A stretch of DNA of 64,000 nucleotides from Chrysemys picta bellii (lineage: Eukaryota): positions 9,300,001 to 9,364,000 of the forward strand of contig NC_088813.1 of assembly GCF_011386835.1 (NCBI RefSeq), given 5' to 3'. Shown here piece by piece: positions 1 to 35,395 of this stretch (position 1 is its first letter; every line of letters starts with the position of its first letter). The notes beneath the pieces were generated by a model. The model saw only the letters and a list, made by a program, of their open reading frames with translations, had not been told where the DNA came from and did not search any database. The position numbers and the translations under genes are program-made.

Positions 1-465
1 AGTCAGGCTGGTTTAAAGGGTCAGCATTCAAATTACACTAAAAATAACCTAGAAATTTCCTCCCAACTATGAAAAATCTGCCTAAACAAGTATTTTCTAA
101 ACGGAAATAGTAGCTTGGTCTAAGGTTGAACTAACTACATCAAGGCAGAAGCAGTTCACCCCAAACCACCCTCTCCGTGCCTTCAAACTGAGTACTTTAC
201 GTATAAGCACAGAAATTTTGTGCATAGGGGAATATTTTTATTTAATAGCATTTGCTGCTCAGTATTCCCTCAGGACAATATGGGTGAACATATGTCTCTC
301 TTAGGGCTCACCTACAAGGATCAGACAGATGTTTTTATGATCTTCCTGTGCTAAAGAGATGGCCCAGGGGTAGAGTGAGTCAGCATACTAGCTTTTCACG
401 TCTTGGAATTGGACTCTGTCGGTGGTCACAAGTGAAAGGAGTGTTGGTGTTTTAATCTAATCCAC

Positions 466-1530
466 TGTGAACATTTGGCTATATCGTAAGACCACATTGA
501 GACAGATATGGCAATTTCATGCAATATCCTTGAAAAACCTTATTGAATTAAGTTTAAGCAACTTGGGAGTCCATTGTATTAAATGCAGTGATTATGTATT
601 ATCATGGGCTGAGATTGCATGTAACTCTCTTGGGGAAAGAGATGATGTGAACCCTGGGAATGTTATGAACTTCAAAGGACTGTACTGAACAATGGACTTG
701 ACAAGGACTTTTGGGACAGTGTCAAGTGGTTTGCCAGGGGAATCTCTAGCGGGAGATGAATGCAAATTCCCCACCACTGCAATGCAAAAGCCCAGCCTTT
801 TAAAGCTAGGCTCCAGCAGAGAACTACTGTCTGCTGATCACCTTTTCCCAGAGTCTCAAGATCAAAGGCCCAAGGAAAGGATAGACTAAACTATTCACTT
901 GTGTGCTAGTTCTGAGCTAAGGCTGTTATCAACTTGTAACCACGGGGAAAACTCCTACCAGAAACTCTGCTGGAGTTGGGGAGTGATCTATGGTAAGCTT
1001 ATTAGCATGCATGTAGGTTATTTTATTGTTCTTAATGTGTTTTCTCTGTAATGTTTTCACCTTCGAGCAAAATGCAGAGGCTGACCTGGTTAGGCAGTCT
1101 GGCTTGCTGGGGATATCACAGTGAAGGCAGAGAACTGTGCAGCCTGGCAAAACCCACTCAGGAAGGAGAAAGACATGGGTCTCTGCCCAAGAGGGGTGAC
1201 AGCTGTGGAGTTGGGAGCCTACAGTGGGTGCTCTTAAGGAACCATGGAGGGGGAATACAGGTGTAATTGACCGGAACCATGACACATTTGGGAAGCTATG
1301 GGCTGGGTGCAGCGGGCCGGGATTGAGGTGCTCTGGCACACCTGTTTGAGGTGGCTCAGGATTGGACTAGCAACAGGTGCTCAAGTCAAGGTGGGGAACA
1401 CACCATCAGAGTCTTTGGGAGTGGAAGAGCAGTGAACTGAGTGAGGGCCTCTGTCAGAGTTGTGGGTCTCGGTAAGGTTGGATTTGCTGCAAGGCAGTGT
1501 TGAGTTGCACTGACAGAGCTGGGTGGTGAC
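466..1530 (+). mobile_element. Degenerate LTR-like element (boundaries uncertain)
   Basis: Internal blocks resemble the other LTRs here (ggtaagcttattagcatgcatgtagg…ttttattgtt…); no TSD found. Confidence 0.45.
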
Positions 1531-2374
1531 GATACCTAACTTCAGCCTGTGCCACGCTCAGCCTTGCCGCTCCCCACACAGTAGAATTCACCCCCCAAGT
1601 TAACCATCAAAACTCCAGAATGAGACTTTTTAAAATAAATAACTCAAATGTCCCTCGACAATCCCCAATACATGTGTGATAGAACATGATCATCATCAAC
1701 TCAGAGATACTAAACACAAACCTACAAAGCCCACAGAGAGAGTTCAACAGCTAAACGCAACAGAGGAGTTCCCACCTGCATCCACCAGGATGGAAAGCCC
1801 CCAAAAGTGAAGAATAGAGATAAGCTGGACCACGAAGGGGTTGCTACCAATTCACTGAGCCCAAGAACACACAAAGTTTGCCTAGGCTGCATTGGCAATT
1901 TGCCTAGAGCCCAAGGCCAGCACCTACTCTGCATAAAGACGCAGCTGCCCTCAGCTTTAACACAGAGGAGTCACCCATGTAGAAGCAGTCTCTGTGAGCC
2001 ATACCTCTGAGTTAAAGATAGGGGCAGCTGCATCATAGAACTTAACTATTGTTTGGAACATCAACAAGGAATTACAGCCCCAGGATTAAACTACACTAGC
2101 CACTAAGTGTTACTGTTGCCCTACAGCAACAGAGTCATATTTAAAATGGCTGCAACTTATGTCTTGGACAACACAGAGCCCGCTGTTGGAGCTTAGGAGC
2201 AGTAGTTATAATTATGTATAACTTATTAATGGGATTTCCCTAAGACTAGAGTAAGTTTGTGGTGAGGATCACAGCCTAGCAAGGCTTTAAAGTGAGAACA
2301 AGATACGGTACAAGAGTAAACTGAAATGAAGTCATTTGAATTATTTATCATTTGCTACATTTTTTTTTAAATGG

Positions 2375-2530
2375 ATTAGGACATGGAGCCTTTTTGCTTC
2401 CAGGTAACTTGTGAGCAAGCTTTGTTACCGGCTAATGGCTGCTAGATAGTTTATGTGAAATGAATTAAAGAGGCTCACTCCAGTTCCTAGCGAGCAGGTA
2501 TTTTAAAAGTTCTACCACCACAGGTGGCAC
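2375..2530 (+). mobile_element. LF-SINE fragment
   Basis: gagcctttt…ctaggt…atggctg…tatgtgaaatga…ctccagttcctag resembles the LF-SINE consensus as I recall it. Confidence 0.55.
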
Positions 2531-3849
2531 TGTCCTACAACACGGTTGGCAGACACAGCAAAGTTGAGGTGTACTGGTAGAGGGCAGCTTGCAGCGCTAC
2601 TGCCTGTGCTGTACCTGCTCTGGCCAGGGGGAGGTGGCGTTCAATCTCCAGTCAATCAGCATTACGCTCAGTTTAAAGAACTGTGCAACCGCTACACCCT
2701 AAAAGAATTCTTTAACTCAGTTTCATACTTTGGCATTTCTTACATCAATAGCCACAGACAATGGGCTAACAGGTGTCCTTAGGACAGAGGTGATTTGGAG
2801 TTAAATGATGAACAATTGAGATGGATGGTGAGCGCTTTACCAGTGACTTCAACAGACTTAATAAGACTCTCCGGCACTAATGAGCCTACGCTGTGCTCTA
2901 TGTTCCCAATTCAATGCAGTTTGGAAGAAGAGCCATCGATAGGGACAGTTTCCATATGTGAGACAATTCCCAGGGCAGGAGGGCAACCGGGGGTGGGAGA
3001 AAACGATAGGTGATCTCACTTCAGGACGTCAGTGCCTTGAGAAACAGGATAATGATGGGCACCGGGACTCTGTTGGGAAGCAGCCCACTGCACCAACACG
3101 GACGGGGCACTCTGGGTAGGGGGGCAAAGCATCTCGGGAGAGGAAGGAACGCTGAGAATCAGAGAGGAAAGGGAGGAATGAAAATATGCATGTACAAGAG
3201 TGTAAAAAAAAAATATCCATCTCACTCTCTCCTTATACAGCTAGTGAGGTCCGTTCTGCTGTTTCTGCTGCATGCAAGCTCTGATGTCAATGGGAGCTGC
3301 ATGCATATAGCAGTGGCAGAATCAGATCCACCGTGTTCAGAGAAAGCTGTTTATCACTTTCCCTCCCCCAGGACAGGGGGGAGATAAAATTTCTATCTAT
3401 AGTCTCTCATCTAATGATTGTCTCCCTGCATTCTATTCTTTATTCTGACTGCAGCCTAGCTTTTATTCTAATAGATAAGGTTCTAGCCCGGCAGAGCCCA
3501 AACTGCAGACCACAGCCCCATCATGCAGCCTGTGGCCACCCTTCCCCTGTCACTGCAGGGTGAGGATAAAGCTGATCCAGGCTGCAGGTTGTAATTGCTG
3601 GTGAACTCAACCAACAAGCAGTTTCTAGTAGGTACAAACATAGGGCATCTTTTGATTTTCAAGCGTACATTTAGGTGCCAGGTAGGCTTGGCCTGTGGGG
3701 TCCCAGAAAGCTGCTAATGCAGCCCTTGCAGTCCCAATGTTTGAGAGCCCCATTCTATCATATAAGCATCTTGCTAGTTGCACTGAATTCTCTCTTACAC
3801 AAACTTAAACGAGAGCACCCACTGGCATCTTCCCCAACCAACTGGCTCA

Positions 3850-3966
<117 letters not shown>

Positions 3967-4404
3967 TCAGAACCTAAAAGGCCTGTGAATCAGAGACTGT
4001 CTGGAAACAAGAAAGGGGCACAGATAACTATCACCTCCCACTAAAACACACCCACAACAAGCTTAGAGAGAAGAGAGCTCCAAGCATAGCGATGGCCAGA
4101 TACAAGATCATTCCTTAAAGAGAAACTAGAGTTTATTTTATACAATGTGCCAATCAAACCTCTAGGCTCATGATCATTCAATGTTCAAAACCGTGTATTT
4201 TAAAATAAATCTAAGTTGACCCAATATCACCAAGAACTGTAATACACTCCGCAATGCACAGAAAAGGATACCTTCCCCATCAGCTCATTCCAAGCTCACC
4301 CCACTGAGAATACCTCAGCAGCAGCCCCCAGATGTTCAAACTAGGGAACATCACCAAGAGTCTCCTAGGTGATCTCAGCTGCAGTGTTTAATCTGAATCA
4401 GTCA

Positions 4405-4510
4405 ATTTTGAATGCTGGGGAAACATGTCTAGTGGTCGAGTCAGGAGTCCTAGCTCTGCCAACTGACTTGCCGTGTCATCTGGGACAAGTCATTTCCCTT
4501 TCTGTACCCC
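4405..4510 (+). mobile_element. MIR/CORE-SINE fragment
   Basis: tctagtgg…tcaggagtcct…gacttgccgtgtcatctgggacaagtcattt…cagtttc core. Confidence 0.55.
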
Positions 4511-4904
4511 AGTTTCAGTCACCCGGAAGAGCAAGGCTACTGAATGAGTTAATGCACTTCTCAAATAATTAAAGCTAAACTGCATTTGTCAAATTAATGA
4601 CAGAAAACAGCATAATATCAGTAAACATTCTGTAAAACAGATCTCACTATAGAGTTGTCACACGATTAGGAGTTTAGGTCAGAACTACTGGGTTTGCATA
4701 TTCATTAAGTCAGAATTATCCAGGCTTTACGAAAAAAGATGTACAACGATGTTAAAAGTCACCACAGCTACGCAGTAGTAAGGTCCAAGACACTTCTCCC
4801 ACTTTTGTTGGAAGTGGGGCTGATGAGTTTGAAGCAGTCAGCCTTCCAGCGGGAGGAAAGTGCTAGAACGGAGCATCTATGCGGTATTTACATGCAAGTT
4901 AAAA

Positions 4905-5110
4905 TAAATTAAATTAAAATAAATTAATGGAGATATCCTATCTCCTAGAACTGCAAGGGACCTCTGAAAGGTCATCGAGTCCAGCCCCCTGCCTTCACTA
5001 GCAGGACCAAGTACTGATTTTGCCTCAGATCCCTAAGTGGCCCCCTCAAGGATTGAACTTATAACCCTGGGTTTAGCAGGCCAATGCTCAAACCACTGAG
5101 CTATCCCTCC
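4905..5110 (-). mobile_element. Tortoise-type Pol III SINE (tRNA-derived head + CR1 3' tail)
   Basis: Minus strand: A box TAGCTCAGTGG, B box GTTCAATCC, then CR1-like ctggactcgatgacct…ggtcccttgcagttctag tail. Confidence 0.85.
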
Positions 5111-5121
5111 CACCCCAGTTA

Positions 5122-5367
<246 letters not shown>

Positions 5368-5701
5368 TCAGATCGACCACCCTCAGGATTTACAGACACA
5401 AGATATGCCGTCTCAAACAACACACAGGCAGTGACTCGAGGGGTCCCTGATGTGCTGAGAAAGGGTGTTGACTGCATTCAGCACTGCCAGTGCAACCAGC
5501 ACAGGCACAGTGATAAAAACGTGGCACAGCTACCATCTGTTCTGAGCTGACACTTCCTGGCTTGTTTATATCGCATGTTCCCCATGACATTGTAGAGTAA
5601 GAAATCACATCCTGTGCAATTTGGGTTTTTATAAACACAAAGCTCAACACCTGGACCTCCAAGGCACATGCTTTGGGAACCTGAACACTAATACTCTATG
5701 C

Positions 5702-5832
5702 CAGTGGTTTTCAACTTTTTTTCATTTGTGGACCCCTAAAAAATTTTGAATGGAGGTGTGGATCCCTTTGGAAATCTTAGATATAGTCTGTGGACCCCCA
5801 GGGGTCTGCAGACCACAGGTTGAGAACCACTG
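5702..5832. mobile_element. hAT (Charlie-like) MITE
   Basis: TIRs cagtggttttcaac / gttgagaaccactg; a partial second copy follows at ~5850-5926. Confidence 0.75.
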
Positions 5833-6334
5833 TCCTATGGTAACAACAACCTTTTCTGGATCCCTTAAGGATTAGACACAGTCTGCCGACACAACAGGTC
5901 CACAGACCACAAGTTGAAAACTATTGCTCTAAAGGGGCTTTATCCAGATGGTGGGAACTATTTATATAGCATCCAAAACTGCAGGCCTGGGGCTCATATT
6001 AAATCCACAAAGACTTATGATGCATATGCTTAACTTTGGGACAATTCACAGTATGTAAAGTTCCCTTTATCTCTACCACCCGTTTTGGAGTGGGGTCCCT
6101 TTTCACTTGTGTGAGCATCTACACTCAATCCAGTTCAGAATAAGACCTGATCAAGGAACCACAGTGCTGAAAATATAAAGTAATCCAATGAACTTAGTGT
6201 TTTAACATCTCTCATTGCAAATGTAAATTCTTGAGCTGGCCAGAAAATACTTTATAGCTGACATGTTACTGTTGCTGAGATCCTGTGACTCTGTGCAGAA
6301 GATGAACAGGCTATTACTGTGGTTAGCTTTTTCA

Positions 6335-6550
<216 letters not shown>

Positions 6551-7073
6551 TTAGCAATGCTTTGTAAATACATGGCACATGTGCATTTTTCTATCACTCA
6601 AACACTCTCATCTTCATAGTGTCCCAAGAATTGTACATGCATCTAGATAAGCTAGTGATCAGGCATCCAAACTAATTGCAGTATATGTGATTGGCCAGGA
6701 TACCTGAACTTATACCGACTTCTGCATAAGGTGTCATGGGATCTTTAATGACAAGTGGTCAGGACCTAAGCTTCAAACCTCATCCTAAAGAGAAGAAACG
6801 TTTCTTCCAGTTTCCTGGTCAAATTTCAATTTAGGTGATCACATTCTGACTTCTCGAAATCCCCCATTTAGTTTCAAATGGATATGGGATAGGTCACTTG
6901 CTGTCCTGCCATTCACCATAAAAAAGTGTCTTATGTTTCACCCAAAAGGACACTGCATTTCAGTAGTGGGTGAGGTAACCCCTATGCAGATAGGCTGTAA
7001 CACATTTTCGGATGAAAGACAATGGAAACAGCCTTATAATTACGAGGTGGACGGGAGAGTCCCCGGCACTTAC

Positions 7074-7128
7074 CGTTCCATAGAGCTTCACATTCTGAGC
7101 ACATTTCTTGCATATTGTGTTGGTTTTA
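7074..7128 (-). CDS. FAM76A: FAM76A exon 3 (SKTNTICKKCAQNVKLYGT)
   Basis: tttaatag acceptor, ACG|GTAAGT donor; 55 nt. Confidence 0.95.
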
Positions 7129-8164
7129 CTATTAAAACAAAAGATTAAGAAAAAGCAAGAATGAAGTATAACTGTACCAGCAATATCTGGGTACGGATTA
7201 AGCCCTTTGCGCTTGAGAGCTAAGTTTCCCCTAACCATACAGCTCTCCTGACAGGATATTTGTATTCATGTTCACTAGTGGCTTTTATATAAAATGTATT
7301 TGCTATCCCTGCCTGGTGATGATAATCTACCAGAGTGAGGTATTCTTGAAAGACAGCATTTTCATAAGGCAGCCCCTTTAATTTAATTAAGGCTTCAACC
7401 TTTAATTTCAGCACGTATTTGCTCACTTGGGATTGTGGTCACCAACAAAACGAGTTAGTTGGTCACCAACTAACCTGCTGTGGACATTTACCCAGCATTA
7501 AACCACATGACCTAGCACTAGTGATAATCTCTGTACCGGAGAGGGCAAGCACTAGAATAGCAGGATTGATGCAGATCAGGACCCCTATATGCAGGATAGA
7601 AAACGGAACCACCTTGCACAGTGCCTGTATGAAATATGCTCAACAGGATCGTTGGTCCCTCTTCTTCATATATTCACAAAAATGAAATTAAAACCAAGCA
7701 GAAAACCATGTTTACTGCTGCAAATGCAGAAGGACAAGACAGGTATTTATGCTACAGCACAGAGAATAAGAATAATTTTTGCATGCCAAAACACAGAAGG
7801 GGAACAGCTTCCAGGAGCACCCAGGCACGTCACTGAAAGGTACAGCCAAGCACCACCCAGGAAGAAATACCACACACCATGCTGCAAAATCAAGAGCACA
7901 GAATGTGTCTGCCTGACAGCGATTGGGACTATGATTAGAGCCTCATCAAAGGGCACAATACTGGCCCCTACAAGCACTCGGATGACGTAGGACAGAATGT
8001 TGGATCATTGAAGGCAGAACACCAGGGGCATAATGAGGATTCCAAGGAATGGGCTGCTGTAACCAATTGGCCTATGGGTTATGGACACAAAGAATCATCA
8101 GTGGAAGGCGAGGAGGACAGGAATTTAGTTTCAGAAACATTTTACAACAGAAAATGGGAGCGGA

Positions 8165-8345
8165 GAGAAAGGATGGCTCAGGGCTTTAGGTAACAGGATA
8201 TGAAGCCTTTCACCTTTAGGTTGCCAGTTCATAAACAGCATAGGCCACTAGTTACCCAAAGCTATTACCAACTGATGGTTGCTCATTGGCTTATGTGAAA
8301 TTAGTTTGGTGGCTCTCAGTCTTGTTCCCACATTACATGCCCTGT
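8165..8345 (+). mobile_element. LF-SINE fragment in FAM76A intron 2
   Basis: atggctcaggg…gcctttcacctttagg…gatggttg…tatgtgaaattagtttggtggctctcagtc. Confidence 0.65.
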
Positions 8346-8684
8346 CCCAATTGGCACTAACATACCAAGTTCCCTTTCTCAGCAGAACTCTCAAGGTCAC
8401 CAAACTGTCTCCTTAGTTTTTCCGGGCTGATACCTAAAGATCAGGGTGAAGTTACTTTAGTGGGCCAGTGTGTGTGAAGCTTGTACCGGTACTGCTTCTG
8501 CTGTACCTGTTCTATGGAAAATTTCAGTTTCCCGAGCTGTCAATAAATGCTAAATTCACACATAGAAAAGGGGACCTTGTTGAGAGAATCCAGATGCTGA
8601 AGTGGGACTATTTTCGATATGTATTAAAGAAGCAGATGCCAACTATTTTTTATTGTCCAGTGTTTAAGCTTTGCAGAGATTTAC

Positions 8685-8749
8685 CTTTCCTGTTGGAATT
8701 CGGTCCTACAGTAAGTGCATTTGACAATGGGATGCGCAATTCGACACTC
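8685..8749 (-). CDS. FAM76A: FAM76A exon 2 (ECRIAHPIVKCTYCRTEFQQE)
   Basis: ttttgctgcag acceptor, AAG|GTAAAT donor; 65 nt. Confidence 0.95.
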
Positions 8750-8904
8750 CTGCAGCAAAAAGTAGAGTTAGTGCTTCTACCACACACGCTCCCCAAAGAC
8801 TCAACAATCCCCCCCCACACACACACACACAACAACAGAACAGCTTGGACAAGGCAGAGGTATTCTTCACAGCAATGGTCATGGACCAGTCATCCTGCAA
8901 TCAC

Positions 8905-9935
<1,031 letters not shown>

Positions 9936-10004
9936 AGATCAGTTAGAATGAAGGAAGGAAGGCTGCTCAGCTGGGTCTGCAGGCTTCCGGGGGGGGGCGA
10001 AGGA

Positions 10005-10690
10005 TCGGGGAGGGAACAGATGGAGGGGGTAGATGTGGGGGAGGGTAGATGGGGAAGGGGCCAGATGTGGGGGGAGAGGGGGAAGGGGCCAGATGTGGGG
10101 AGAGGGTGGATGGGGAGGAAGAGGGGAGCAGATGGGAGTGGGAGGGCAGGTAGGGGGAAATAGATGGAGGGGGTAGATGTGGGGGGAGGGTAGATGGGGA
10201 AGGGGCCAGATGTGGGGGGAGGAAGAGGGGGAGGGTAGATGGGAGTGGGAGGGCAGGTAGGGGGAAACAGATGGAGGGGGTAGATGTGGGGGAGGGTAGA
10301 TGGGGAAGGGGCCAGATGTGGGGAGAGGGTGGATGGGGAGGAAGAGGGGAGCAGATGGGAGTGGGAGGGCAGGTGGGGGGGAAACAGATGGAGGGGGTAG
10401 ATGTGGGGGAGGGTAGATGGGGAAGGGGCCAGATGTGGGGGGGAGAGGGAAGGGGCCAGATGTGGGGAGAGGGTGGATGGGGAGGAAGAGGGGAGCAGAT
10501 GGGAGTGGGAGGGCAGGTGTGGGGAAACAGATGGAGGGGGTAGATGTGGGGGAGGGTAGATGGGTGGAGATGGGCATATGGGGGAGGAGGAGAAGAGGGG
10601 GAGGGCAGATGGGGGAGGAAGAAAGGAGCAGATGGGGAAGGAGGAGGTGGGGGTAGATGGGGGAGGTGGATTTGGGGAGTAAATGGGGGG
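10005..10690. repeat. G-rich purine minisatellite (~120 bp higher-order unit)
   Basis: Repeats of ggaggggtagatgtggggagggtagatggggaaggggccagatgtgggg...gggagcagatgggagtgggagggcagg. Confidence 0.9.
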
Positions 10691-11875
10691 AGGAGACACA
10701 CAAGGTGGGTTTTGAAGTGCTACCGTAATGCAGGCAGTACCACTGGAGCCGGGGGAGCAGACGTGATGGGGAGAGCTGTGTGAGAGGCAGTGTGAACGGA
10801 GACCTGGGGGCAGAGGAGAGGAAGTTGATGGGTGTAGATACATCAAAGGCGGGAGGAAAGTGGGTCTGAGAAAAAGAGAAGGGAGAAAGAGAGGCAGGAT
10901 TCTGGGAGCGAAAACTCCTGAGTCTTTGGCTTTCTTTGTGATGGAAATTCCAGCCGTTGATGGCTGGCTGCCAAAGTAGCTGCACATCTGCCAGCCTGAA
11001 ACATAGACAAAGCAAACTGCATTTGCCACTGGTGTGAAGTCTGGGTAAGAAGGCCCAGCGTTGCAAATTGCAGCTTTCTTCGTCTGCACTAAAAGTTTGC
11101 ACAGGGTGTAGCTTCATCAGTTGCTGGGGAATCAGGACATATTTCTAATATAGTGAGGCCTTAGAAATTCTAACTGCTGGAGCAATACAAGGACAAATCA
11201 TTACAATGCATAAATGCTTTTAATTTAATAATAAAATTTAACCAGCAAGAAGCTGCAATCTTGATGTATATAGATCAGGTATTGTGAATTTAAATTTGGA
11301 TCCAAATATATTTTTTTCAAAAGAAAGCTTTTATAAAACTGAAAGAACAATAGACAAGTTTCTCATTTTAAGACTTCAAAGAAAGCATTTTTTAAACTAA
11401 TAGACATTCCCTTTAGTGTTTGAAAACTAAAATTTTGCACCACTTAATAATCTGAAAGTGAAACTGGTTTAATTGATTATCATTGCCCTTCCTGACAGAA
11501 ATGTAAATACCAAAGTGCCATGTTGGTTAGGTTTTAAAAATTCTTTCTGAGGATCTAAAGTATTATGAGTAACATCTGTAAAGAAAATGACTTATGATCA
11601 TGTTGACAAAGAACGCACAATACTTTTGTCTGATTCTTGGGTGCCATATTTCAAGTTTGCACATAATTGCATAATTTCCTACTGCTCTCCACTCCAGTGA
11701 GGGATACCTGAAACTTTTGGAGAGTTGAGGTTTCACTACACTTTATAAAATACTAGTAAATGTTCTTTAGCATATTTTATGGAAGAAGTGAAAATGAAAT
11801 TTGAGGGCCTCACTGCAATACTCTGGTCTTGAATCTTTCCTATGAAGGGGTGGGGAGAAACTGTTGTGATGTAAG

Positions 11876-12100
11876 GTTTCAGAGTAGCAGCCGTGTTAGT
11901 CTGTATCCGCAAAAAGAAGAACAGGAGGACTTGTGGCACCTTAGAGACTAACAAATTTATTAGAGCATAAGCTTTCGTGGACTATAGCCCACTTCTTCGG
12001 ATGCATATATGCATCCGAAGAAGTGGGCTATAGTCCACGAAAGCTTATGCTCTAATAAATTTGTTAGTCTCTAAGGTGCCACAAGTCCTCCTGTTCTTCT
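11876..12100. mobile_element. Penelope-derived inverted-repeat insertion with hammerhead motifs on both strands
   Basis: Long palindrome centred on gatgcatatatgcatc. TSD tgttgtgatgta(a/g)g at 11862-11875 and 12101-12114. CCGAAGA…GAAAGCTT cores on both arms. Confidence 0.85.
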
Positions 12101-12112
12101 TGTTGTGATGTA

Positions 12113-12260
12113 GGCTGTGTCTACACTGCCACTTTCAGCGCTAAAACTTGTTCAGGTAAAGCTACCACCGCTCGTTTGGGGTGGGGTTTTTTTATTGCTG
12201 TGAGAGCTCTCCCCAGCGATAAAGCGTGTCTACGCTGCCCACATCACAGTGCGGCTGTGG
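12113..12260. mobile_element. PIF/Harbinger-type MITE fragment
   Basis: Begins ggctgtgtctacact, a terminus typical of this turtle MITE group. Confidence 0.5.
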
Positions 12261-12434
12261 CTGTGCATGTGGGTAGTATTGACATACTCTCTGTGGGAAA
12301 TGGGTGTGCAGATTAGGGAGGCCCTGCTGTATTTAACTATCTCAATGGCTAGTTTAACTACCAGATAAGTATGCAGTGTGGAGGAGTAATAATGAAGGAT
12401 GTGAAACTTGTTGCTTTGCAGAGAATGATAACAT

Positions 12435-12620
12435 ATGGAGATATACCTATTTCATAGAACTGCAAGGGACCTTGAAAGGTCATCAAGTCCAGCCCCCTGC
12501 CTTCACTAGCAGGACCAAGTACTGATTTTTGCCCCAGATCCCCAAGTGGCCCCCTCAAGGATTGAGCTCACAATCCTGGGTTTAGCAGGCTAATGCTCAA
12601 ACCACTGAGCTATATCTTCC
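12435..12620 (-). mobile_element. Tortoise-type Pol III SINE (second copy)
   Basis: Near-identical to 4905-5110. Confidence 0.85.
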
Positions 12621-14459
12621 CCCCAAACAGTGACTCCATGTAGGGAGCAGGGGTTCATGTAGATGTAGGGGACCATGACTGTCCAGCTTGCGGGAACATG
12701 GCACTACCTGCAAAAATGTAAAGACTAAAACTGGCTTGATGCAAGGAATAAAGGACTTGACTAGAAAAGCTGATGGCAGTACAGAATGAGGTCTGCCAAA
12801 CCTCATGACCTGGCTAAGGAAAGGGGTGTCCTTTTCTTTGCCGAGCTCTTTGAGCATCAGCCTGTGTCACATCTGCTATAATCACTAAGGAAAAATGTTT
12901 GATCAGCTGAATGGCAGTGTTCACAAAGGTGCTATGCTGCTGCAGGAAATTCAGTAAGAAGCATTCAAAGGTGCCTGTGCTTCACGGGTCTCCCAGTACA
13001 ACTCCACAAGGAGAATATTCAGGCTTGTTTATTATCTTGCAAAACCTGGTAGGCTTGTTTCAGATCTCCCCGGGGCGGCCAGCTTTGCAGCAACGGATGG
13101 CTTGGACGCTGGATGAAAGAACTGTTTGGTCCTTATGGGAGCCAAAATTGCTGAGTGGATGGCTCAAATGACGTATGAAAAATGTTGTTATGGTGGAGAT
13201 CCCCCCGGCTCATCTGGAACTGGATTGGAACCAATATCAACCTAAAAGTGAAAGGCTCTGTAATTCATTTACCTCAACCGCCCACAAGCCAGCCAGCCTT
13301 CCTAAACTGGGGCCAGATTGGAACTGGTGTTGTAATAACCCTGTATCCCATTCCATAGAGTCTGTTTTTGGACGTTTATGACCAACAGCTTGGAGAGTAA
13401 ATAGTTTGGAGGATCGGGGAGTACAAGTTGCCAAAGAAAACTTGAGTCAGCTTCCATTCCCTTTCACATTGTAGGGTTTTTCAATAGCCCGTCAGTTGCT
13501 TCTGTACGTTTTATGAACAGCTATTTCCAGTTTCTGACTCTCCTTGTGTCCAGTGCTCTGTGAATAATTAACTTGCTTTTTGCAAGTCATAAAAAATGTG
13601 TCCCAGAGATCCTCATCCAGTGCTGAAATGCAGCCATCTCTGGGCTGAAGCATGGTAGCTGTTAACAACCACACAGCAAAGCTGCACAAAGATCACTCAT
13701 CCAGCAAAAGTGCACCTGTCTCTGGGGTGGGGCATGGCATGGTGTGCAACAGTTTAGTGCAAGGAGAAAACCCAATCCAGTTGAAATCTAGGGAGTCAGA
13801 ATGGAGTTAGCTGGTTTGGGCTAGACACGTTAGCAAACTCCATCATCCTAATACTCTGACCTCCAGATTGGAATGTATCTGGTTCAAAAGATGCCATGGC
13901 ATTTCCCTGAAGAGTATGAGCATTAAAACCCTAGATCAAGGGAAGCAACAGGTTAACCCTAAAATGCCCAAACTCCAATGGTATTGAGCCAAAGGTGTGG
14001 CATGACAACCATAATTGTAGATGGACACTTGCAATGGATTTGTTGTTAATGCTAATGGTGATTTTGTAACTAATGTGTTGCTATTACCAAGAACTGTAAG
14101 AATGTACAATGTTCCTAATCTGTTGGAAAATCCCTTGAACATGTTAAAAGGAATACATGAAAACACACTTTATGTTAAAAGGCCTTGTTATACTGATGTT
14201 TCACAGTTGATGCCTAGAAACAGTATTGGAACTTTTCACAGGAGAAAAGACATTCCAGACCTAATGTGCTGTATGAGAAGGGAAACTAAGGCACACTACC
14301 ATATTGCTTTCACGGCTAAATGCCAAGATTCCTGTACTATAAACATAAAAAGACTTTCAAAATCGACCAATGAGATGCCCAACTTGAGGAACTTTAAAGG
14401 GGCCTGGTTTTCAGAAAGTGCTGAGCCACCTGGTTATGATGTGATTCTTTGATCTACGT

Positions 14460-14497
14460 CAGGGGTCGGCACGCGTGCCATAGGTTGCCTACCCCCG
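14460..14497. mobile_element. 38-bp minimal hAT MITE
   Basis: caggggtcggca…tgcctacccccg termini; degenerate 8-bp TSD atctacgt/atctacac. Confidence 0.6.
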
Positions 14498-15027
14498 ATC
14501 TACACATTCCAATCTGGGGGCTAGTCTGGATTTATTTCTGGATGTTTTCTAGAAAGCTGATCTTGCTGTTAAGGCATTGAGTTAGGATTTAGGGACTTGA
14601 GCAACCCACTTTCCCACCTCATCATGATCATATGGCAACCCCCATGATGGGATGGTTGAGATAATCAAGAGAACACTCCACGGTGAGTAAAGTGGACATA
14701 GTTTCTGCTGTTATTGGCTGAAGGCCTTCAACTGTATTGTGACATGTCTGTTGTGAGGTCATCAAGGTGTATGCAGGGGCTGCAGACTGCATTGATCAAG
14801 AGAGGCGGCAGGAGGAACAGCTGCCACTTCCAGCCCAGCTGAGTGAGGGGGACCCAGGGAATGGGGTACCACCAGCCCTGCTGAGAACTTGATGCACCGA
14901 TGACGTTACTCACCCTGTTGAGGGAAACCTGCATCAAAGAAGGGCTTACCACCAGCTCTGCTGAGGGGAATTTTATGAGAGGTTACCAGCCTATGAAGAG
15001 AATCCCTCTTGGGCAGAGTGTAACATC

Positions 15028-16980
15028 ATGGAGAAGAATTCACCCAAGCCTGCATTGAAACACCCAGCAATTGGTATCGACTTGGGCACCACTAAATCCT
15101 GCGTGGGCCTCTTCCGAGACGGCAAGGTGGAAATAATTGGCAACAACCAGGGCATCCGCACCACGCCCAGCTGCGTGGCCTTCACTGAGACGGGGAGGTT
15201 GATAGGGGATGAGGCAAAGAACCAGGCAGCCCTCAACTCTCCTAACATCATATTCAGTGCCAAGCGCTTGATTGGCCGAACGTCTGAAGACCCTGTTGTG
15301 CAGGCAGATGCGGCGTTCTGGCCCTTCCAGATAGTGAAAGCTGAAGGAAAGCCCCAGGTGCAGGTGTCCTACAAGGGAAAGGAGAAGGTTTTCTACCCAG
15401 AGGAGATTTCTGCCATGGTGCTGGGCAACTTGAAGGAGATGGCTGAGGACTACCTGGGCCATCCCATCACCCATGCCATTGTTACTGTGCCAGCCCACTT
15501 CAATGACTCCCAACGCCAGGCCACCAAAGATGCTGGGGCGATCGCTGGCCTCGAGGTGCTGAGGATCCTCAGTGAGACTACAGCTGCCGCCCTGGCCTAC
15601 AGCCTAGACAACCCTAGCAATGGAGAACACAATGTGCTTATCTTTGACCTGGGCGGAGGAACCTTCAATGTCTCCGTCCTCACCATGGATGGGGGCATCC
15701 TCGAGGTGAAGGCCACCTCTGGGGACACCCATCTGGGAGGGGATGATTTTGACAACTGCCTGGTGAGCTTCTTCATAGACGAATTCCTAAAGAAACATCA
15801 GGAGGACATCAGCAAGGACAGGAGGGCCGTGTGGAGGCTCAGGAGGGCTTGCGAGGCAGCCAAACGCACCCTGTCCTCCAACATCAAAGCCAGTATCGAC
15901 TTGTACTGCCTGTACAAAGGGATCGATTTCCACGCAGACATCACCCGGGCCCAGTTCGAGGAGCTGTGTGCTGACCTCTTCCGAGGGACCCTCAAGCCCG
16001 TGGAGAGGGCGCTGCAGGATGCAAAGCTGAGCCAAGCTCAGATCCATGATGTTGTCCTGGTGGGTGCCTCCACCCGCATCCCCAAGATCCAGGAACTGCT
16101 GCAGGATTTCTTTGGCGGCCGGCAGCTGAACAAAAGCCTCAACCCGGATGAAGCTGTCGCCTATGGGGCAGCTGTTCAAGCCGCCATCCTGATCGGAGAG
16201 AGGTCAGAGGTCACGAGGGGCCTGCTCGCCCTGGATGTGGTGTCCATGTCTCTGGGGATTGAGACGGATGCAGGGAAGATGCACACCCTGATCAGACGCA
16301 ACACTGCCATCCCTGCGGTGGTAACTCGGACCTTCACCACCTTCGATGACCATCAGCCTGACCTGCTCATCCGTGCCTATGAGGGGGAGAGAGCTACTGC
16401 CAAGGAGAACCACCTGCTTGGCCGTTTCCGTTTGAAGGACATTTCCCCTGCCCCCCGTGGCATGGTCTTGGTGGAGGCGACCTTCTATATTAACGCAGAT
16501 GGCATCCTGACTGTGTTTGCCGTGGACAAAGTCGCTGGCAATGCCAACCCCATCACTGTGGATGCCAACAAGGGGCGACTGAGCAGAGAGGAGATACAGA
16601 AGTTAGCGGCGGAGGCTGAGAAATACCGAGCTGAGGACAGGGCACAGAAATGGAAATTGGCCACCAAGAACTACCTTCAGTCCTGCGCTTTCAGCATGAA
16701 GCGGACCTCGGAAGATATCCTTAACTACTTCACCTTGCAGGCCAAGAAGAAGGTGATGGAGAAATGTCAGCTGGCCTTCTCCTGGCTGAGTCCAACTGGA
16801 TGGCTGAAGAGGAGGAGGTCACGCCCTATGAAAATGGTCTCGGGGAACTCCCTCCCAGGACTTAAACGCCTCAGTAACAGCACCACGGGCATCAACAGAA
16901 CAAAACCAAACAAGTTCGTGGTCACCACTTGCAGCTGGACTTTCCAGTTTACCCAAACTACCACTGTGATCTACCCATAG
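15028..16980 (+). CDS. Intronless, divergent HSP70-family protein (cytosolic HSPA-like); C-terminal lid frameshifted, no EEVD; possible pseudogene
   Basis: 650-codon ORF with [63 protein letters not shown] and YEGER motifs. HSP70 homology shifts frame at ~16788. AATAAA at 17102-17107. Confidence 0.85.
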
Positions 16981-17738
16981 GAAGTCCTAGCAGAGACCAA
17001 GGAAGCTAGGCTGGCTGGTTGCTGTTGATTTACCTGGATTTACCATCTGATAGAGCCAATTCATAAATGGGACCCCTCCATGAATAACAGCCATCGGCCT
17101 CAATAAATTCTGCTTCTCCTACATGTCTGTACAGGTGCATTTACTAATTACTGGGCAAATAGCACGCTCCATGGAGTGTATGCCACAGATGTATTTGGGC
17201 TGCGAGGTTTAAAGGAACCTAAGAGAGTTAGGTGCCAAATCCCATTGAACTTCACTGGGAGTTGGGCACTTAATTTCCTTAAACTCCTCCAAAATACTAG
17301 CCTTGGCGTCACAGTCTGTCAGTTGTATAGGGACTTTTGAACAGGTTTGTGTGTTTAATGTAGAACCTATAGAAAATGTCTCCTTTCCAAAGGATAACCT
17401 AGAAATTTCCAAATTTTAGGGAGAGATTCTAGTCTGTTATGCTAGGGTAAATCTGAAGTGACTCCATTGAACCTAGCAGAGTAAGGAGCAGATTCTGATC
17501 TCAATTACACTGGGGTAAAACTGGAGTAACTCCAGTTAAGTCAAAATGGTTAGGTACAGATTTTGATCCGCTACCCAGATGTAAATCTGTATTGACTCCG
17601 GAGATGCGTATCTTTTCAGATATATCCCCTCTTATTTGTCTCCTCTGTAATCTAAACAGCCTATATCTTTTATAAACTGATTGAGTGTCCAGACCTCCAA
17701 AACAATTCCTTAGCTACTTACCTTTGGATCTCTTCTTT

Positions 17739-18430
17739 ATAAATATATCAGAGGGATAAATATCAGGGAGGGAGAGGAATTATTTAAGCTCAGTACCAAT
17801 GTGGACACAAGCACAAATGGATATAAACTGGCCATTAGGAAGTTTAGACTTGAAATTAGACGAAGGTTTCTAACCATCAGAGGAGTGAAGTTTTGGAACA
17901 GCTTTCCAAGGGGAGCAGTGGAGGCAAAAGTCATATCTGGCTTCAAGACTAAGCTTGATAAGTTTATGGAGGGGATGGTATGATGGGACAGCCTAATTTT
18001 GGCAATTAATTCATCTTTGATTATTAGCAGGTAAATATGCCCAATGGTCTGTGATGGGATGTTAGATGAGGTGGGATCTGAGTTACTACAGAGAATTCTT
18101 TCCTGGGTGCTGGCTGGTGAGTCTTGCCCACATGCTTGGGGTTCAGCTGATCGCCATATTTGGGGTCGGGAAGGAATTTTCCTCCAGAGCAGATTGGCAG
18201 AGGCCCTGGAAGTTTTTCGCCTTCCTCTGCAGCATGGGGCACGGGTCACTTGCTGGAGGATTCTCTGCACCTTGAGGTCTTTAAACCACGATCTGAGGAC
18301 TTCAGTAACTCAGGCATAGGTTAGGGATTTGTTACAGGAGTGGGTGGGTGAGATTCTGTGGCCTGCGTTGTGCAGGAGGTCAGACTAGATGATCATAATG
18401 GTCCCTTCTGACCTTAAAGTCTATAAGTCT
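17739..18430 (+). mobile_element. CR1 LINE 3' end (ORF2 C-terminus + 3' UTR)
   Basis: …TSTNGYKL…FRLEIRRRFLTIRGVKFWNS…LDKFM*; 3' UTR ends agatgatcataatggtcccttctgaccttaaagtctat. Confidence 0.9.
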
Positions 18431-19166
18431 TCAGTTTCTTCTATAATATGCCAAAATTACTAGATGTGGGGAAAATGTTTGCTATGAAAAAGAAAAAAAT
18501 CACCAAAAATTGTCAACTCACCCGTGTGCTCTGTGTCAAATATAAAACTCATACGTTCAAAGACGGGTCGAGATTCATGATCCTCTAAAAGCCCAAATTG
18601 TTTTTTAGTGACTGCAGTCCAGGGACTAAAAGCCCTGGAAATCTGGGTTCCCAGCATACTTTGCAAATACAGCCTGCACTCTGCATTGTTCCTGCAGAGC
18701 CATCATTGCTCTCTGTAGAACATGAATTCAAGCTGGCATCCTGCTGTGAATGAGGAAAGAGCTCATTTCAGAATCATCCCAGCAAATGGTAAAATAACGG
18801 AAAGCGGTCTAACAGCGCGTGAAACATGGCAAGGAAATGCTATGCTGCCCTCTGCTGGGCGGATCCATCTCTCAAGTGGTGAAGGCCTGTTCTTTAAAGG
18901 AGGAAGATGGGCTGAGGAATGACCCTGGTGTCGTCTGCTCTAAATGACAGCCCTCTACTGCTTGAACTACATGAAAATTCTTAAAGCTGGTAAAAATAGA
19001 AGGTCACATAGGCCTTGTCAGTGCACAAATTGTACTATACCAATGCAGTTCAAATGATATAATCCCTGCTCACCTCCAGTGTGGATGCAGTTATACCAGC
19101 ATAAAGGTGTTTTATACTAGTTGAGTTTATTCCTCTTCGGCAAGAGGAATACTTTTCTGGTAGAAA

Positions 19167-19333
19167 GAAGAACAGGAGGACTTGTGGCACCTTAGAGACT
19201 AACAAATTTATTAGAGCATAAGCTTTCGTGGACTACAGCCCACTTCTTCGGATGCATATAGAATGGAACATATATTGAGGAGATATATATACACACAAAC
19301 AGAGAGCATAAACAGGTGGGAGTTGAAAAAAAA
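19167..19333. mobile_element. Penelope-derived insertion (minus-strand CCGAAGA hammerhead variant)
   Basis: Same family as 11876; TSD ctggtagaaa at 19157-19166 and 19334-19343. Confidence 0.8.
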
Positions 19334-20038
19334 CTGGTAGAAATACACTTATGCCTACTTCTACATTAGAGGTTGTACTGATAGAACGATCAGTTAAAAA
19401 CATATCTCTAACTAGGGAAATACAAAAACTGTTTAGACCAGGCCTTAGTCTTTCTCTGGGGCCATTTGGTCTGGTGTCCAGGAGGACACAGGACAGGTTA
19501 TGGACTAACCAGCAGATGAGAGCTAGTTCAGGGTTCTTGATGGAGACAAGGGGCTGGGATACCTCCATCCAGAGATTAACGCCAGAAGAAAGGCAGGTCT
19601 TTCTCCATGAAGAAGAGGAAAGGAGTCAGCTGTCACAGTTCCTGAGATAACTGAACCTGTGACTGGAACAGAGCAGATAACTGATTTTTTTTAGTTTGGG
19701 GTTTGAACCCAAAAATCCAGGTGTGAAAAAAAAAGTTTGGTTTGCTTTGAACCTTTTTCATTTAGGGTGTTTTTCACCCTTTTTAAAAATTTCTTTTTTT
19801 AAAAAAAATCTGAATTTCAAAACGAAGCGCTGTTTTGAAATTAAAAGTTGCATTTAGTTTTAAAATGGCAGAAATAAACCATTTAGATGTTTTCAGCTCT
19901 TTTCCGGCCAAAACTATTTGCTGAATTCAACCTGAATTTGTGATGAGTTTCAGTGTCCTAAAAATGTATATATTGGTGTATTTACTATTCATTGAAAATG
20001 TAATCTACTTCTGACCCCTTTGTGGCCTCCTTGAGGGC

Positions 20039-33980: not shown

Positions 33981-34992
33981 ACCCTAGAAACCAGCGAGGC
34001 TGGAAAAAGACTTTCCCGGCTCTCTTTTTTTCTCCTGGCCTGAGCAGTGCCGCATAGAGACATGCCGGCTTACATCATGTAAACCAGGCTGAGTCTCAAT
34101 CCCCAAATCTTGTGCAGAAGGACTGAATAAAGCTTTGGGTGAAAACGTGTTCTAAACATCGTAGGCGCTTTATTACCCACAAAGAAAAAGAGAAGAGAAA
34201 TACCAACCTATCTGCAAACTGCCATCGGATGCAGACTGCTTGGGCTAGATTTTCAAGCGCTCACCACCCTCCACAAAGGCCAGACCCTTGAGATCTCAGC
34301 CGCTCCCTTTACGATCCTTATGGCCTGACTTTGCACGGAGGCCTCTTGAAAATCTGACCCCAAGGGTGGAGGCCGAGCCCTGCTGAAAACTGGCTAATGG
34401 AGATGGTAAAATACCAGCCTTGGGTCATCAAGAGGGCCTTCGCTGTGGTAGCTTGGCATTCAGACAGAGTACAGCCCCATTCAGAGGGAATTACTTCGCT
34501 GCATGGGCGGTGTTTAATAAAGTAACACATTGCATTTCTGTAGCAACCCCCACCCTAGGATCTCAGAGCCCTTTGCAAAGGATATTGAGCTGTGAGATGG
34601 GCCAATAGTCTCATCTGCATTTTACAGCAGGGGGAAACTGAGGCAGAGAGAGGGGCAGAAGGTCAGTGGGAAAAGAGTCCAGAAGTCCTGACTCCCACCT
34701 CATCTTTCCTACAGCAGGACAAGCAGGGGTCTAAGTAGGTAGAGCTCTCATTGGTCCATCCAAGGAAAAGAAGGAGCTGTGGGGGGATGTGCTCTCCTGC
34801 TTTAACCCCTGGGGGGACACTGTCTGCAGGGCTAGCGCCTGGAAATGAGACTGAATTGCAGGCTGCAGTACCCCAGTAGCACGCGAGATCCCAGCTAAGG
34901 GCAAGTTCCCGGTTTACTAGCCCCGCAGAAGGGCTGTTTGCAGTCCGTAGGTTCCCCCCAGCGTCAGTAGAGTCCCCAGAGAGAGAGGCTGG

Positions 34993-35240
34993 CTACTGGG
35001 GCCTTATTTTCATGTCCACGTATTTGTAAGAGTAGTGGTACCCCTTCCCGGTGGACCAGTTGATCCCGTTGGCATAGGAGGTGTGTTCACCTTTGAGGTA
35101 CAGCCCGTTGAGGTTGGAGGAGTGGCACTGCCCATACCACCAGCTGCCTTTGTAGAGGATGGCACAGCTGCCCCCAAAGGTGTCGTGGTCTTTGTCGTGC
35201 GTGGAGAACCTCAGATTGTTGTGTCCCGAGAGAGAATCTC
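34993..35240 (-). CDS. Ficolin exon 8 ([20 protein letters not shown]…[17 protein letters not shown]…MKIRPQ*)
   Basis: Terminal FReD exon with Ca-binding DxDxD and WWY..CH.SNLNG motifs. Confidence 0.95.
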
Positions 35241-35344
35241 CTGCAAGGGGCAGAAGGCAAATACACACACGGCTTGGCCTGTGGCATCTTCATTCCATGC
35301 CAAACTCACGGCCTTCGCCTGAGGGCAAAGGCTTTCCCCAGCTG

Positions 35345-35395
35345 GAGTCATAACAAAGAGCCTTGCCTCTAGGTCACCGGTTCAAATCCAGCCCC
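35345..35395 (+). mobile_element. LF-SINE head fragment
   Basis: agagcct…cctctaggtcaccggttcaaatccagccc. Confidence 0.55.

What the first reader, a model, noticed from the sequence alone, without database searches (positions are those of the whole stretch)
15028..16790. Intronless HSP70 with near-intact ATPase residues but a remodelled substrate pocket and linker
Seen: an uninterrupted ~587-codon HSP70 frame with only an in-frame indel, GC-rich codons, a downstream AATAAA, and no poly(A) tail or TSD, so not a fresh retrocopy. By manual comparison with human HSPA8 from memory, D10, T13, K71, E175, D199, T204, E268 and K271 are kept. Normally invariant positions have changed: Y15K, N174S/P176T, D206N, E231D, G339A, linker DLLLLD to GLLALD, and pocket/arch residues ~A406D, Y431F, V438L. 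Inference: either a lineage-specific neofunctionalised HSP70 (altered client specificity or allostery) or a slowly decaying duplicate. No HSP70 gene lies between FAM76A and IFI6 in human.
Basis: partly seen in the sequence, partly recalled or inferred. Interest (0 to 1): 0.72.

Follow-up and report, generated by a model that had tools for sequence, protein, structure and literature searches.

The report
Ancient reptile HSP70 with frameshifted tail
This is a working, expressed heat-shock-70 gene found only in turtles, crocodilians and ostrich-like birds, whose normal tail end was replaced by a new 63-residue tail through a one-base frameshift that has since been conserved for roughly 250 million years.

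Summary
The HSP70 frame is real, but it does not stop at 16790. The open frame runs 15028-16980 (650 codons). HSP70 similarity ends at L587 (16788). The last 63 residues are a non-HSP70 tail without the EEVD end motif.

The same 649/650-residue protein with the same tail is intact in nine genomes I read (three turtles, two crocodilians, four palaeognath birds). It is also annotated in many more species. It always lies beside FAM76A.

Selection is purifying: omega is 0.18 for the gene and 0.21 for the tail, and omega = 1 is rejected. Only the actual tail frame shows constraint. The +2 frame still reads like the canonical HSP70 C-terminus, which points to an ancient one-base frameshift.

RNA-like contigs from two studies of a close relative cover only 14804/14811-17118. 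They show no splice and end in a poly(A) tail 11 nt after AATAAA.

About a fifth of the positions that are near-invariant in canonical HSP70s are replaced clade-wide. These include P176T, D206N/S, E231D, G339A and one linker Leu to Ala. There is no heat-shock element upstream.

It is not a pseudogene or a fresh retrocopy. It is a conserved, remodelled HSPA1-type paralogue that is apparently absent from neognath birds, squamates and mammals. I found no paper describing it. Its function is inferred, not shown.

The parts
14700..14770 (+). Conserved core-promoter block: inverted CCAAT box (ATTGG, 14713-14717) and a TGACAT/TGACG motif, about 60-95 nt upstream of the RNA 5' end. No heat-shock element and no TATA box.
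   Evidence: Eight-species alignment. HSE and TATA scan of 2.5 kb upstream in nine species.
14811..17118 (+). Unspliced, polyadenylated mRNA. The 5' end is at about 14804-14811 and the poly(A) addition site is at 17118.
   Evidence: Runs X5 and X8 have depth of 100-20000 only inside these bounds and 0-6 in the flanks. There is an adapter at 14811, a poly(A) loose end at 17118, and no joints inside the gene.
15028..16980 (+). Coding sequence of 650 codons plus a TAG stop.
   Evidence: omega 0.177.
15028..16203 (+). Nucleotide-binding domain (residues 1-392). D10, K71, E175 and D199 equivalents are kept. Y15K, P176T (15577-15579), D206N (15667-15669), E231D and G339A (16066-16068) are changed.
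16219..16236 (+). Interdomain linker GLLALD (canonical DLLLLD). The Leu-to-Ala change is fixed in all ten orthologues.
16237..16572 (+). Substrate-binding beta domain (residues 404-515), with clade-wide changes such as V409K, T411H, G437D and V438L.
16573..16788 (+). Helical lid, first part (residues 516-587). It is very strongly conserved within the clade and ends at SWL.
16788..16789 (+). Ancient frameshift point between L587 and S588. The +2 frame downstream still reads like the canonical HSP70 continuation.
16789..16977 (+). Novel 63-residue tail with a basic RRS cluster, a second basic patch and a Thr-rich C-terminal motif. It has no EEVD.
   Evidence: The same frame is open in 9 of 9 genomes. 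omega is 0.205 and omega = 1 is rejected at p = 3e-15. The other frames carry stops and give omega 0.8-2.9. No Pfam or PDB match. pLDDT is below 50.
17102..17107 (+). AATAAA polyadenylation signal that is actually used.
   Evidence: An RNA contig ends in poly(A) at 17118.
399..9576 (-). Neighbouring FAM76-family gene, lying head-to-head with the HSP70 gene. This is the conserved synteny anchor.
   Evidence: Its exons are collinear with the alligator and kiwi FAM76 genes.

Best explanation
**What it is.** This is a functional, transcribed, lineage-restricted cytosolic HSP70 paralogue of the HSPA1 (inducible-type, intronless) lineage. It arose before turtles and archosaurs split.

**How it formed (shown).**
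- On its stem branch it took many substitutions at positions that are otherwise near-invariant.
- A one-base frameshift right after the lid sequence SWL swapped the last lid helices, the flexible Gly/Pro-rich region and the EEVD motif for a new 63-residue tail.
- Since then the whole protein, tail included, has been under purifying selection.

**How it most likely works (inferred).**
- It probably still binds ATP and docks its two domains like an ordinary Hsp70. The D10, K71, E175 and D199 equivalents, the phosphate loops, the adenosine contacts and a hydrophobic linker are kept.
- Hydrolysis and allostery are probably slowed or altered, because of D206N/S, G339A, E231D, P176T, the linker Leu to Ala, and T204 to A/G in birds.
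- Without EEVD it cannot dock TPR co-chaperones (HOP, CHIP) or use EEVD-dependent class B J-proteins.
- With no heat-shock element, it is probably driven by a CCAAT-type promoter rather than by HSF1.
- The tail carries a basic K/R-R-R-S cluster, which looks like a nuclear-targeting or basophilic-kinase site. It ends in a Thr-rich, strand-prone motif. It is probably a new targeting, partner-binding or self-regulating module.
For: **Conservation.**
- The frame is intact with the same tail in nine genomes.
- 649/650-residue copies are annotated in many turtles (including side-necked species), in Crocodylus, and in emu.

**Synteny.** The order FAM76, then this HSP70, then a cathepsin-L-like gene holds in alligator, kiwi and the window. 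The two tinamou loci carry the peptidase gene downstream.

**Selection.**
- omega is 0.177 for the gene, 0.175 for the core and 0.205 for the tail. Likelihood-ratio statistics against omega = 1 are 868, 794 and 62.
- Pairwise dN/dS is 0.12-0.25 in deep comparisons, at dS 0.7-1.7.
- Only frame 0 of the tail is constrained.

**Frameshift origin.** The +2 frame matches canonical C-termini better than 299-300 of 300 shuffles in turtles and crocodilians.

**Expression.** Unspliced polyadenylated RNA contigs come from two studies.

**Family placement.**
- The clade is monophyletic (support 100) on a stem of 1.1-1.2 changes per site.
- It sits inside the tetrapod HSPA1-type group and apart from the HSC70 type.
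- HSPA1A scores 822 bits against 776 for HSPA2.

**Sequence and structure.**
- 77 of 377 near-invariant columns are replaced in all ten orthologues, and 172 are kept.
- The AlphaFold model matches ATP-state BiP and DnaK at about 2 A rmsd.
- There is no HSE, and a promoter block is conserved.
Against: - No biochemical or proteomic data exist. ATP binding, slowed hydrolysis and every proposed tail function are inferred from sequence alone.
- The tissue or condition of expression is unknown, because run identities are coded. Contig depth is also a poor measure of expression level.
- Neither tree contains tetrapod HSPA2 sequences. The sister relation to mammalian HSPA1 fell from support 99 to an unresolved tetrapod group at 86 when rows were added.
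- The tail is modelled with low confidence.
- Absence from neognaths, squamates and mammals rests on annotated proteins only.
Confidence: 0.8

Rival explanations
1. A slowly decaying duplicate or unitary pseudogene whose open frame has survived by chance.
For: - 20% of the near-invariant HSP70 positions are replaced.
- The EEVD motif is lost through a frameshift.
- omega (0.18) is higher than expected for canonical HSP70s (general knowledge).
Against: - The frame is open in 9 of 9 genomes spanning turtles, crocodilians and birds.
- omega = 1 is rejected for the core and for the tail.
- The replaced residues are mostly identical across the clade, so the change happened on the stem and was then frozen.
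- It is transcribed and polyadenylated.
Confidence: 0.02
2. An ordinary heat-inducible HSPA1A orthologue, as the automatic names ('HSPA1A-like', 'HSP70 II-like') imply, doing the standard stress-chaperone job.
For: - It groups with HSPA1-type proteins.
- It is intronless like them.
- The names come from the source databases.
Against: - It has no EEVD and a different tail.
- No HSE lies within 2.5 kb upstream in turtles or crocodilians, and there is no TATA box.
- The stem branch is 1.1-1.2 changes per site, against about 0.05 for the other internal branches.
- Active-site and linker residues are changed.
Confidence: 0.07
3. A catalytically crippled Hsp70-like scaffold. It would bind nucleotide but not cycle, acting as a holdase, a decoy, or an Hsp110-like regulator of other Hsp70s.
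For: - D206N/S, G339A, E231D and P176T are fixed clade-wide. T204 becomes A or G in birds.
- From memory, Hsp110 proteins also carry Thr at the P176 position. This was not tested here.
Against: - The K71, E175, D10 and D199 equivalents and the phosphate loops are invariant.
- The title of PDB entry 1ats states that T204 is not essential for hydrolysis.
- The linker stays hydrophobic, and the model adopts the docked ATP state.
- The substrate-binding beta domain is under the same constraint as the rest of the protein.
Confidence: 0.12
4. The tail is an assembly or annotation artefact, and the true protein ends in a canonical HSP70 C-terminus.
For: Some Ensembl models of this gene end differently or splice out internal parts (P0009, P0018 and P0022).
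Against: - The frame is the same in nine independent assemblies.
- RNA contigs cross the frameshift point without any gap or joint (records 24 and 31).
- The +2 frame stops after about 25-30 codons, at different places in different species.
Confidence: 0.01

Closest known systems
HSPA1A / HSPA1L / HSPA6 (vertebrate inducible-type, intronless cytosolic HSP70s)
   Same: - Best sequence match: HSPA1A at 822 bits and about 64% identity.
- Same domain order and no introns.
- The tree places it in the tetrapod HSPA1-type group.
   Different: - It lacks EEVD, the last lid helices and any HSE.
- 64 near-invariant positions in the homologous part are replaced clade-wide.
- Its genomic position beside FAM76A differs. 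By general knowledge, mammalian HSPA1 genes lie in the MHC class III region.
HSPA7 (human HSP70 pseudogene; one ostrich entry is named after it)
   Same: An HSPA1/6-type copy carrying a frameshift. That HSPA7 has a frameshift is from memory.
   Different: - Here the frameshifted product is conserved, under purifying selection and expressed.
Yeast Ssb1/2 and vertebrate HSPA14 (EEVD-less Hsp70s working at the ribosome)
   Same: - Ssb is a clear sequence and fold relative (597 bits; 5tky).
- Like this protein, it lacks EEVD and uses a basic C-terminal region. That detail is from memory and is a lead only.
   Different: - There is no specific relationship: the tree places this protein with the HSPA1-type HSP70s instead.
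- The tail has no detectable similarity to any solved chain.
- Ribosome binding was not tested.
Hsp110 / Grp170 nucleotide-exchange factors
   Same: Divergent Hsp70-superfamily members with weakened ATPase cycling. A Thr at the P176 position is recalled from memory only.
   Different: - It has none of the long insertions or the extended lid of Hsp110.
- It is 64% identical to canonical HSP70.
- No test of this comparison was made here.

Membership tests
Hsp70 family (Pfam PF00012) | Full-length match to the family profile above the curated cut-off | tested here: met
   702 bits against a cut-off of 20.6, over residues 14-579.
Hsp70 family (Pfam PF00012) | Two-domain fold with a nucleotide-binding domain, a hydrophobic linker, a beta-sandwich and a helical lid | tested here: met
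   The AlphaFold model has mean pLDDT 79. It matches ATP-state BiP (5e84, 6asy) and DnaK (4b9q) at 2.0-2.8 A rmsd. This is a predicted model, not an experimental structure.
Hsp70 family (Pfam PF00012) | Catalytic and nucleotide-contact residues (Hsc70 D10, K71, E175, D199, T204, D206, G338-G339) | tested here: inconclusive
   D10, K71, E175 and D199 are invariant. D206 is N or S in all ten orthologues, and G339 is A in all ten. T204 is T in turtles, S in crocodilians and A or G in birds. Enzyme activity cannot be tested with these tools.
Canonical cytosolic HSP70/HSC70 (HSPA1, HSPA2, HSPA6, HSPA8) | C-terminal EEVD motif for TPR co-chaperones | tested here: not met
   The protein ends in a Thr-rich motif (TQTTTVIYP, or TQTTT[VI]IDP in the four palaeognath genomes read). 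No EEVD occurs in any of the 22 orthologues.
Heat-inducible HSPA1-type genes | Heat-shock elements (alternating nGAAn trimers) close to the start site | tested here: not met
   No trimer with one mismatch or fewer lies within 2.5 kb upstream in the five turtle and crocodilian loci. Three birds have one one-mismatch site at about -1.6 to -1.7 kb.
Heat-inducible HSPA1-type genes | Phylogenetic placement with HSPA1-type proteins, and an intronless gene | tested here: met
   It sits in the tetrapod HSPA1-type group (SH-aLRT 99, then 86). It is split from the HSC70 type at support 99. The mRNA is unspliced. Tetrapod HSPA2 sequences were not in the trees.
Processed pseudogene / recent retrocopy | Genomic poly(A) remnant, target-site duplication, disabled frame and neutral evolution | tested here: not met
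   There is no A-run after the AATAAA site. The frame is intact in nine species and omega is 0.18. Target-site duplications were not searched formally.

The most novel reading that the evidence does not exclude
A peptide created in one step by a frameshift has been kept as a functional module for about 250 million years. It has turned an HSPA1-type chaperone into an EEVD-independent Hsp70 with its own targeting, partners or self-regulation. Possible routes are the basic RRS cluster and the Thr-rich strand-prone end, the latter perhaps acting as a built-in pseudo-substrate. The gene was later lost in neognath birds. It would be a natural experiment on what a cytosolic Hsp70 does without HOP or CHIP coupling.
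Probability: 0.45. Interest if true: 0.72.

Novelty: new variant of a known kind. Interest (0 to 1): 0.6.

Why it matters
**Unusual for the family.** Cytosolic HSP70s are among the most conserved animal proteins, and by general knowledge their EEVD end is regarded as essential for co-chaperone coupling.

**What this gene adds.**
- It is a long-lived vertebrate paralogue that discarded EEVD and part of the lid by a frameshift.
- It changed active-site and linker residues, yet has stayed under selection and is strongly transcribed in at least some samples.
- It is a clear, datable case of a new protein segment born by frameshift and then conserved.
- It offers a handle on EEVD-independent Hsp70 function.
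- It may be a marker of gene loss at the base of Neognathae.

**Annotation.** The automatic names 'HSPA1A-like' and 'HSP70 II-like' hide a distinct gene. Several Ensembl and B10K models truncate or mis-splice it.

Tried and rejected

- A word search with the tail alone returned only turtle and crocodilian copies. It is word-limited and missed even the bird copies, so it says little about distant kin.
- The large representative search was not run. At 50% clustering these proteins would probably be represented by a canonical HSP70, and the operators flagged its cost.
- Pfam and PDB searches of the tail gave nothing.
- Seven literature searches and two papers on HSP70 family evolution gave no description of this gene.

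**Analyses that failed or were discounted.**
- AlphaFold on the substrate-binding domain plus tail, with 22 close orthologues, failed (mean pLDDT 39.5). It says nothing about tail docking.
- Run X1 has even depth of about 10 across the gene and its flanks. I treated it as DNA-like and did not count it as expression.

**Ideas dropped or corrected.**
- The lizard 'HSC71-like' protein P0063 was tested as a possible squamate orthologue. It is a 6.5-kb multi-exon gene with no FAM76 nearby, and it groups with the HSC70 type.
- My early note equating P176 with the DnaK P143 'proline switch' was wrong. That residue is Hsc70 P147, which is kept here.
- Programmed frameshifting back into the old frame was rejected. 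The +2 frame stops after about 25-30 codons, at different places in different species, and shows no constraint.

Full report
**1. Observation**

The window holds one uninterrupted frame from ATG 15028 to TAG 16978-16980, which is 650 codons.
- Pfam HSP70 matches residues 14-579 (702 bits).
- The best solved relative is human HSPA1A (7kw7_C, 822 bits), matching residues 11-590 with one two-residue gap.
- Query numbering is HSPA1A plus 8.

- The D10, T13, K71, E175, D199, T204, E268 and K271 equivalents are kept.
- Y15K, N174S, P176T, D206N, E231D, G339A, the linker GLLALD, A406D, Y431F and V438L are present.

Other details also hold.
- AATAAA lies at 17102-17107 with no genomic A-run behind it.
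- GC3 is 0.71.

After L587 (16786-16788) the frame runs on for 63 residues that resemble no HSP70 and lack EEVD.

**2. Orthologues and synteny**

A word-based search of 5.8 billion proteins returned full-length 649/650-residue relatives with the same tail:
- turtles at 88-96% identity;
- crocodilians at 75-77%;
- palaeognath birds at 70-76%.

After these the list drops to ordinary HSP70s at about 64%. Cluster look-ups add sea turtles, emydids, tortoises, Platysternon, the side-necked Emydura, Crocodylus, emu and cassowary.

I fetched the DNA of eight orthologues. In all nine genomes, including two tinamous whose annotation stops at SWL, the frame is intact. It continues in the same phase to a shared Thr-rich end.

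The gene lies head-to-head with a FAM76-family gene and upstream of a cathepsin-L-like gene in alligator and kiwi. The window has the same order:
- FAM76 exons at 399-9576 on the minus strand;
- ficolin-like exons at 34957-39218;
- cathepsin-L-like exons from 50252.

A second search with a tinamou query again found only palaeognaths, turtles and crocodilians at 67% identity or above. The next hits were canonical HSP70s at 57-58%. There was no neognath bird, squamate, mammal or amphibian copy. A lizard candidate proved to be a multi-exon HSC70 with no FAM76 nearby.

The painted-turtle origin of the window agrees with the Chrysemys model P0018, which is identical in the shared parts.

**3. Selection**

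A codon model on the fixed species tree:

| Region | omega | Statistic vs omega = 1 | p |
|---|---|---|---|
| Whole gene | 0.177 | 868 | 7e-191 |
| HSP70 core | 0.175 | 794 | 1e-174 |
| Tail | 0.205 | 62.4 | 3e-15 |

- Pairwise Nei-Gojobori ratios are 0.12-0.25 in deep comparisons, in each of the four regions, at dS 0.7-1.7. Synonymous sites are therefore not unusually conserved, and no overlapping nucleotide-level element needs to be invoked.
- In the tail, only the actual frame shows constraint: omega 0.11-0.25, Fisher p from 1e-4 to 1e-10.
- The other two frames give omega 0.8-2.9 and carry two to four stops in every species.

**4. Origin of the tail**

Read in the +2 frame, the DNA after SWL gives [11 protein letters not shown] in turtles and ESSQMAEKEEV in crocodilians. 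This is in register with the canonical continuation, which a local alignment shows as DANQLAEKEE.
- This piece matches canonical C-termini better than 299-300 of 300 shuffles in turtles and crocodilians. The match is weaker in birds.
- The in-frame tail scores at chance.

The simplest reading is a one-base loss at 16788/16789 in the common ancestor. The remnant of the old frame survives only because the new frame is constrained.

The tail has no Pfam or PDB relative. It is modelled with pLDDT below 50: disordered from about residue 596 to 629, then three short weak strands.

Across 22 orthologues the invariant tail features are:
- a W-L-[KR]-[KR]-R-R-S cluster;
- K-M, and several Gly residues;
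- the terminal T-T-x-S-x-T-x-Q-x-T-Q-T-T-T-x-I motif.

**5. Family placement**

In two maximum-likelihood trees the ten orthologues form one clade (support 100) on a stem of 1.1-1.2 changes per site. Neighbouring internal branches are about 0.05.
- The clade sits inside the tetrapod inducible-type (HSPA1-like) group. Support was 99 with mammals in the first tree and 86 for an unresolved tetrapod group in the second.
- It is split at support 99 from HSC70-type proteins.
- HSPA1A also outscores HSPA2 (822 against 776 bits).

**6. What changed and what did not**

Among 377 alignment columns that are at least 97% conserved in 64 canonical HSP70s:
- 172 are kept in all ten orthologues;
- 77 are replaced in all ten, of which 13 lie in the non-homologous tail;
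- 128 are mixed.

Most replaced positions carry the same new residue across the clade. That means a burst of change on the stem, followed by conservation.

Clade-wide changes include Y15K, P176T (next to catalytic E175), D206N/S, E231D, G339A, the third linker Leu to Ala, V409K, T411H, G437D and V438L. Birds also have T204 to A or G.

Kept are the D10, K71, E175 and D199 equivalents, the GGG phosphate loop, S340-T341-R342, E268, K271 and S275.

The full-length model takes the docked ATP-state shape of BiP and DnaK at about 2 A rmsd. The title of PDB entry 1ats records that T204 is not essential for hydrolysis.

**7. Expression**

No run is on record as RNA, but two runs from different studies of a close relative (X5 and X8) behave as RNA.
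- Contig depth is 100-485 and 4000-20000 respectively, and only between 14804/14811 and 17093/17118. The flanks read 0-6.
- One X8 contig ends in a poly(A) run at 17118, 11 nt after AATAAA. Another begins at 14811 next to an adapter.
- No joints fall inside the gene. Contigs cross the frameshift point without gaps.
- A DNA control (X15) has even depth of 17. X1 looks DNA-like and was not counted.
- Six other RNA-sized runs of the same species label hold almost none of the sampled words. This hints at restricted expression but proves nothing.
- Of 21 listed differences from the window inside the coding sequence, 15 are synonymous.

**8. Promoter**

- No heat-shock-element trimer (one mismatch or fewer) lies within 2.5 kb upstream in turtles and crocodilians.
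- No TATA-like hexamer lies within 600 nt.
- A block with an inverted CCAAT box (14713-14717) and a TGACAT/TGACG motif is conserved about 60-95 nt upstream of the RNA 5' end.

**9. Reading**

Shown:
- a conserved, syntenic, expressed gene under purifying selection;
- restricted, as far as annotated proteins show, to turtles, crocodilians and palaeognath birds;
- a tail born by frameshift and since conserved.

Inferred from established Hsp70 knowledge:
- ATP binding and domain docking are retained;
- hydrolysis and allostery are altered;
- coupling to TPR co-chaperones and to EEVD-dependent J-proteins is lost;
- regulation is independent of heat shock;
- the tail is a new functional module, possibly for nuclear targeting or phosphoregulation through the basic RRS cluster, or acting as a pseudo-substrate.

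The pseudogene, retrocopy, artefact and ordinary-HSPA1A readings are rejected or made unlikely, as detailed under the rival explanations.

**10. Novelty**

The protein is in public databases only under automatic names. Seven full-text searches and two HSP70-evolution papers (PMC8423806 and bioRxiv 10.1101/2022.09.06.506793) do not mention it. It is a new variant of a known kind.

No human sequence was used or sought.

Noticed in passing
window 16822 (codon 599): The window reads CGC (Arg) in the tail's basic cluster. All four laid runs, including same-species DNA, and all 21 other orthologues read Gly. This is a private variant or an assembly error.
   Followed up: partly
window 13780-14570 and 17720-18500: High-copy interspersed repeats flank the gene. 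Summed DNA contig depth reaches tens to hundreds of thousands, against about 17 in unique sequence. The 143-residue ORF at 14021-14452 lies inside the upstream repeat.
   Followed up: no
window 34957-39218 (-): These exons are collinear with an alligator gene that has collagen and fibrinogen-C domains (ficolin-like). It lies between the HSP70 and the cathepsin-L-like gene. Kiwi has no such gene called in the interval.
   Followed up: partly
window 15096 (codon 23, the Y15 equivalent): The close relative sampled in runs X5 and X8 reads AAC (Asn) where the window and all ten aligned orthologues have Lys.
   Followed up: no
L008 (ostrich, older assembly), alignment columns 358-368: An 11-codon in-frame deletion in the nucleotide-binding domain is seen only in the ostrich copy. 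A newer ostrich protein entry is 643 residues long. It could be real or an assembly artefact.
   Followed up: no
public protein models P0009, P0018, P0022, P0019-P0021, P0130: Several public models of this gene are wrong or truncated. Ensembl models splice out internal parts or end in other frames. B10K models stop at SWL. The Platysternon entry is named 'gem-associated protein 4'.
   Followed up: partly
window 8001-12000: This stretch is GC-rich (0.61), followed by strong GC skew (+0.5 at 10-12 kb). It lies at the 5' end of the FAM76 gene and is probably its CpG-island promoter region.
   Followed up: no
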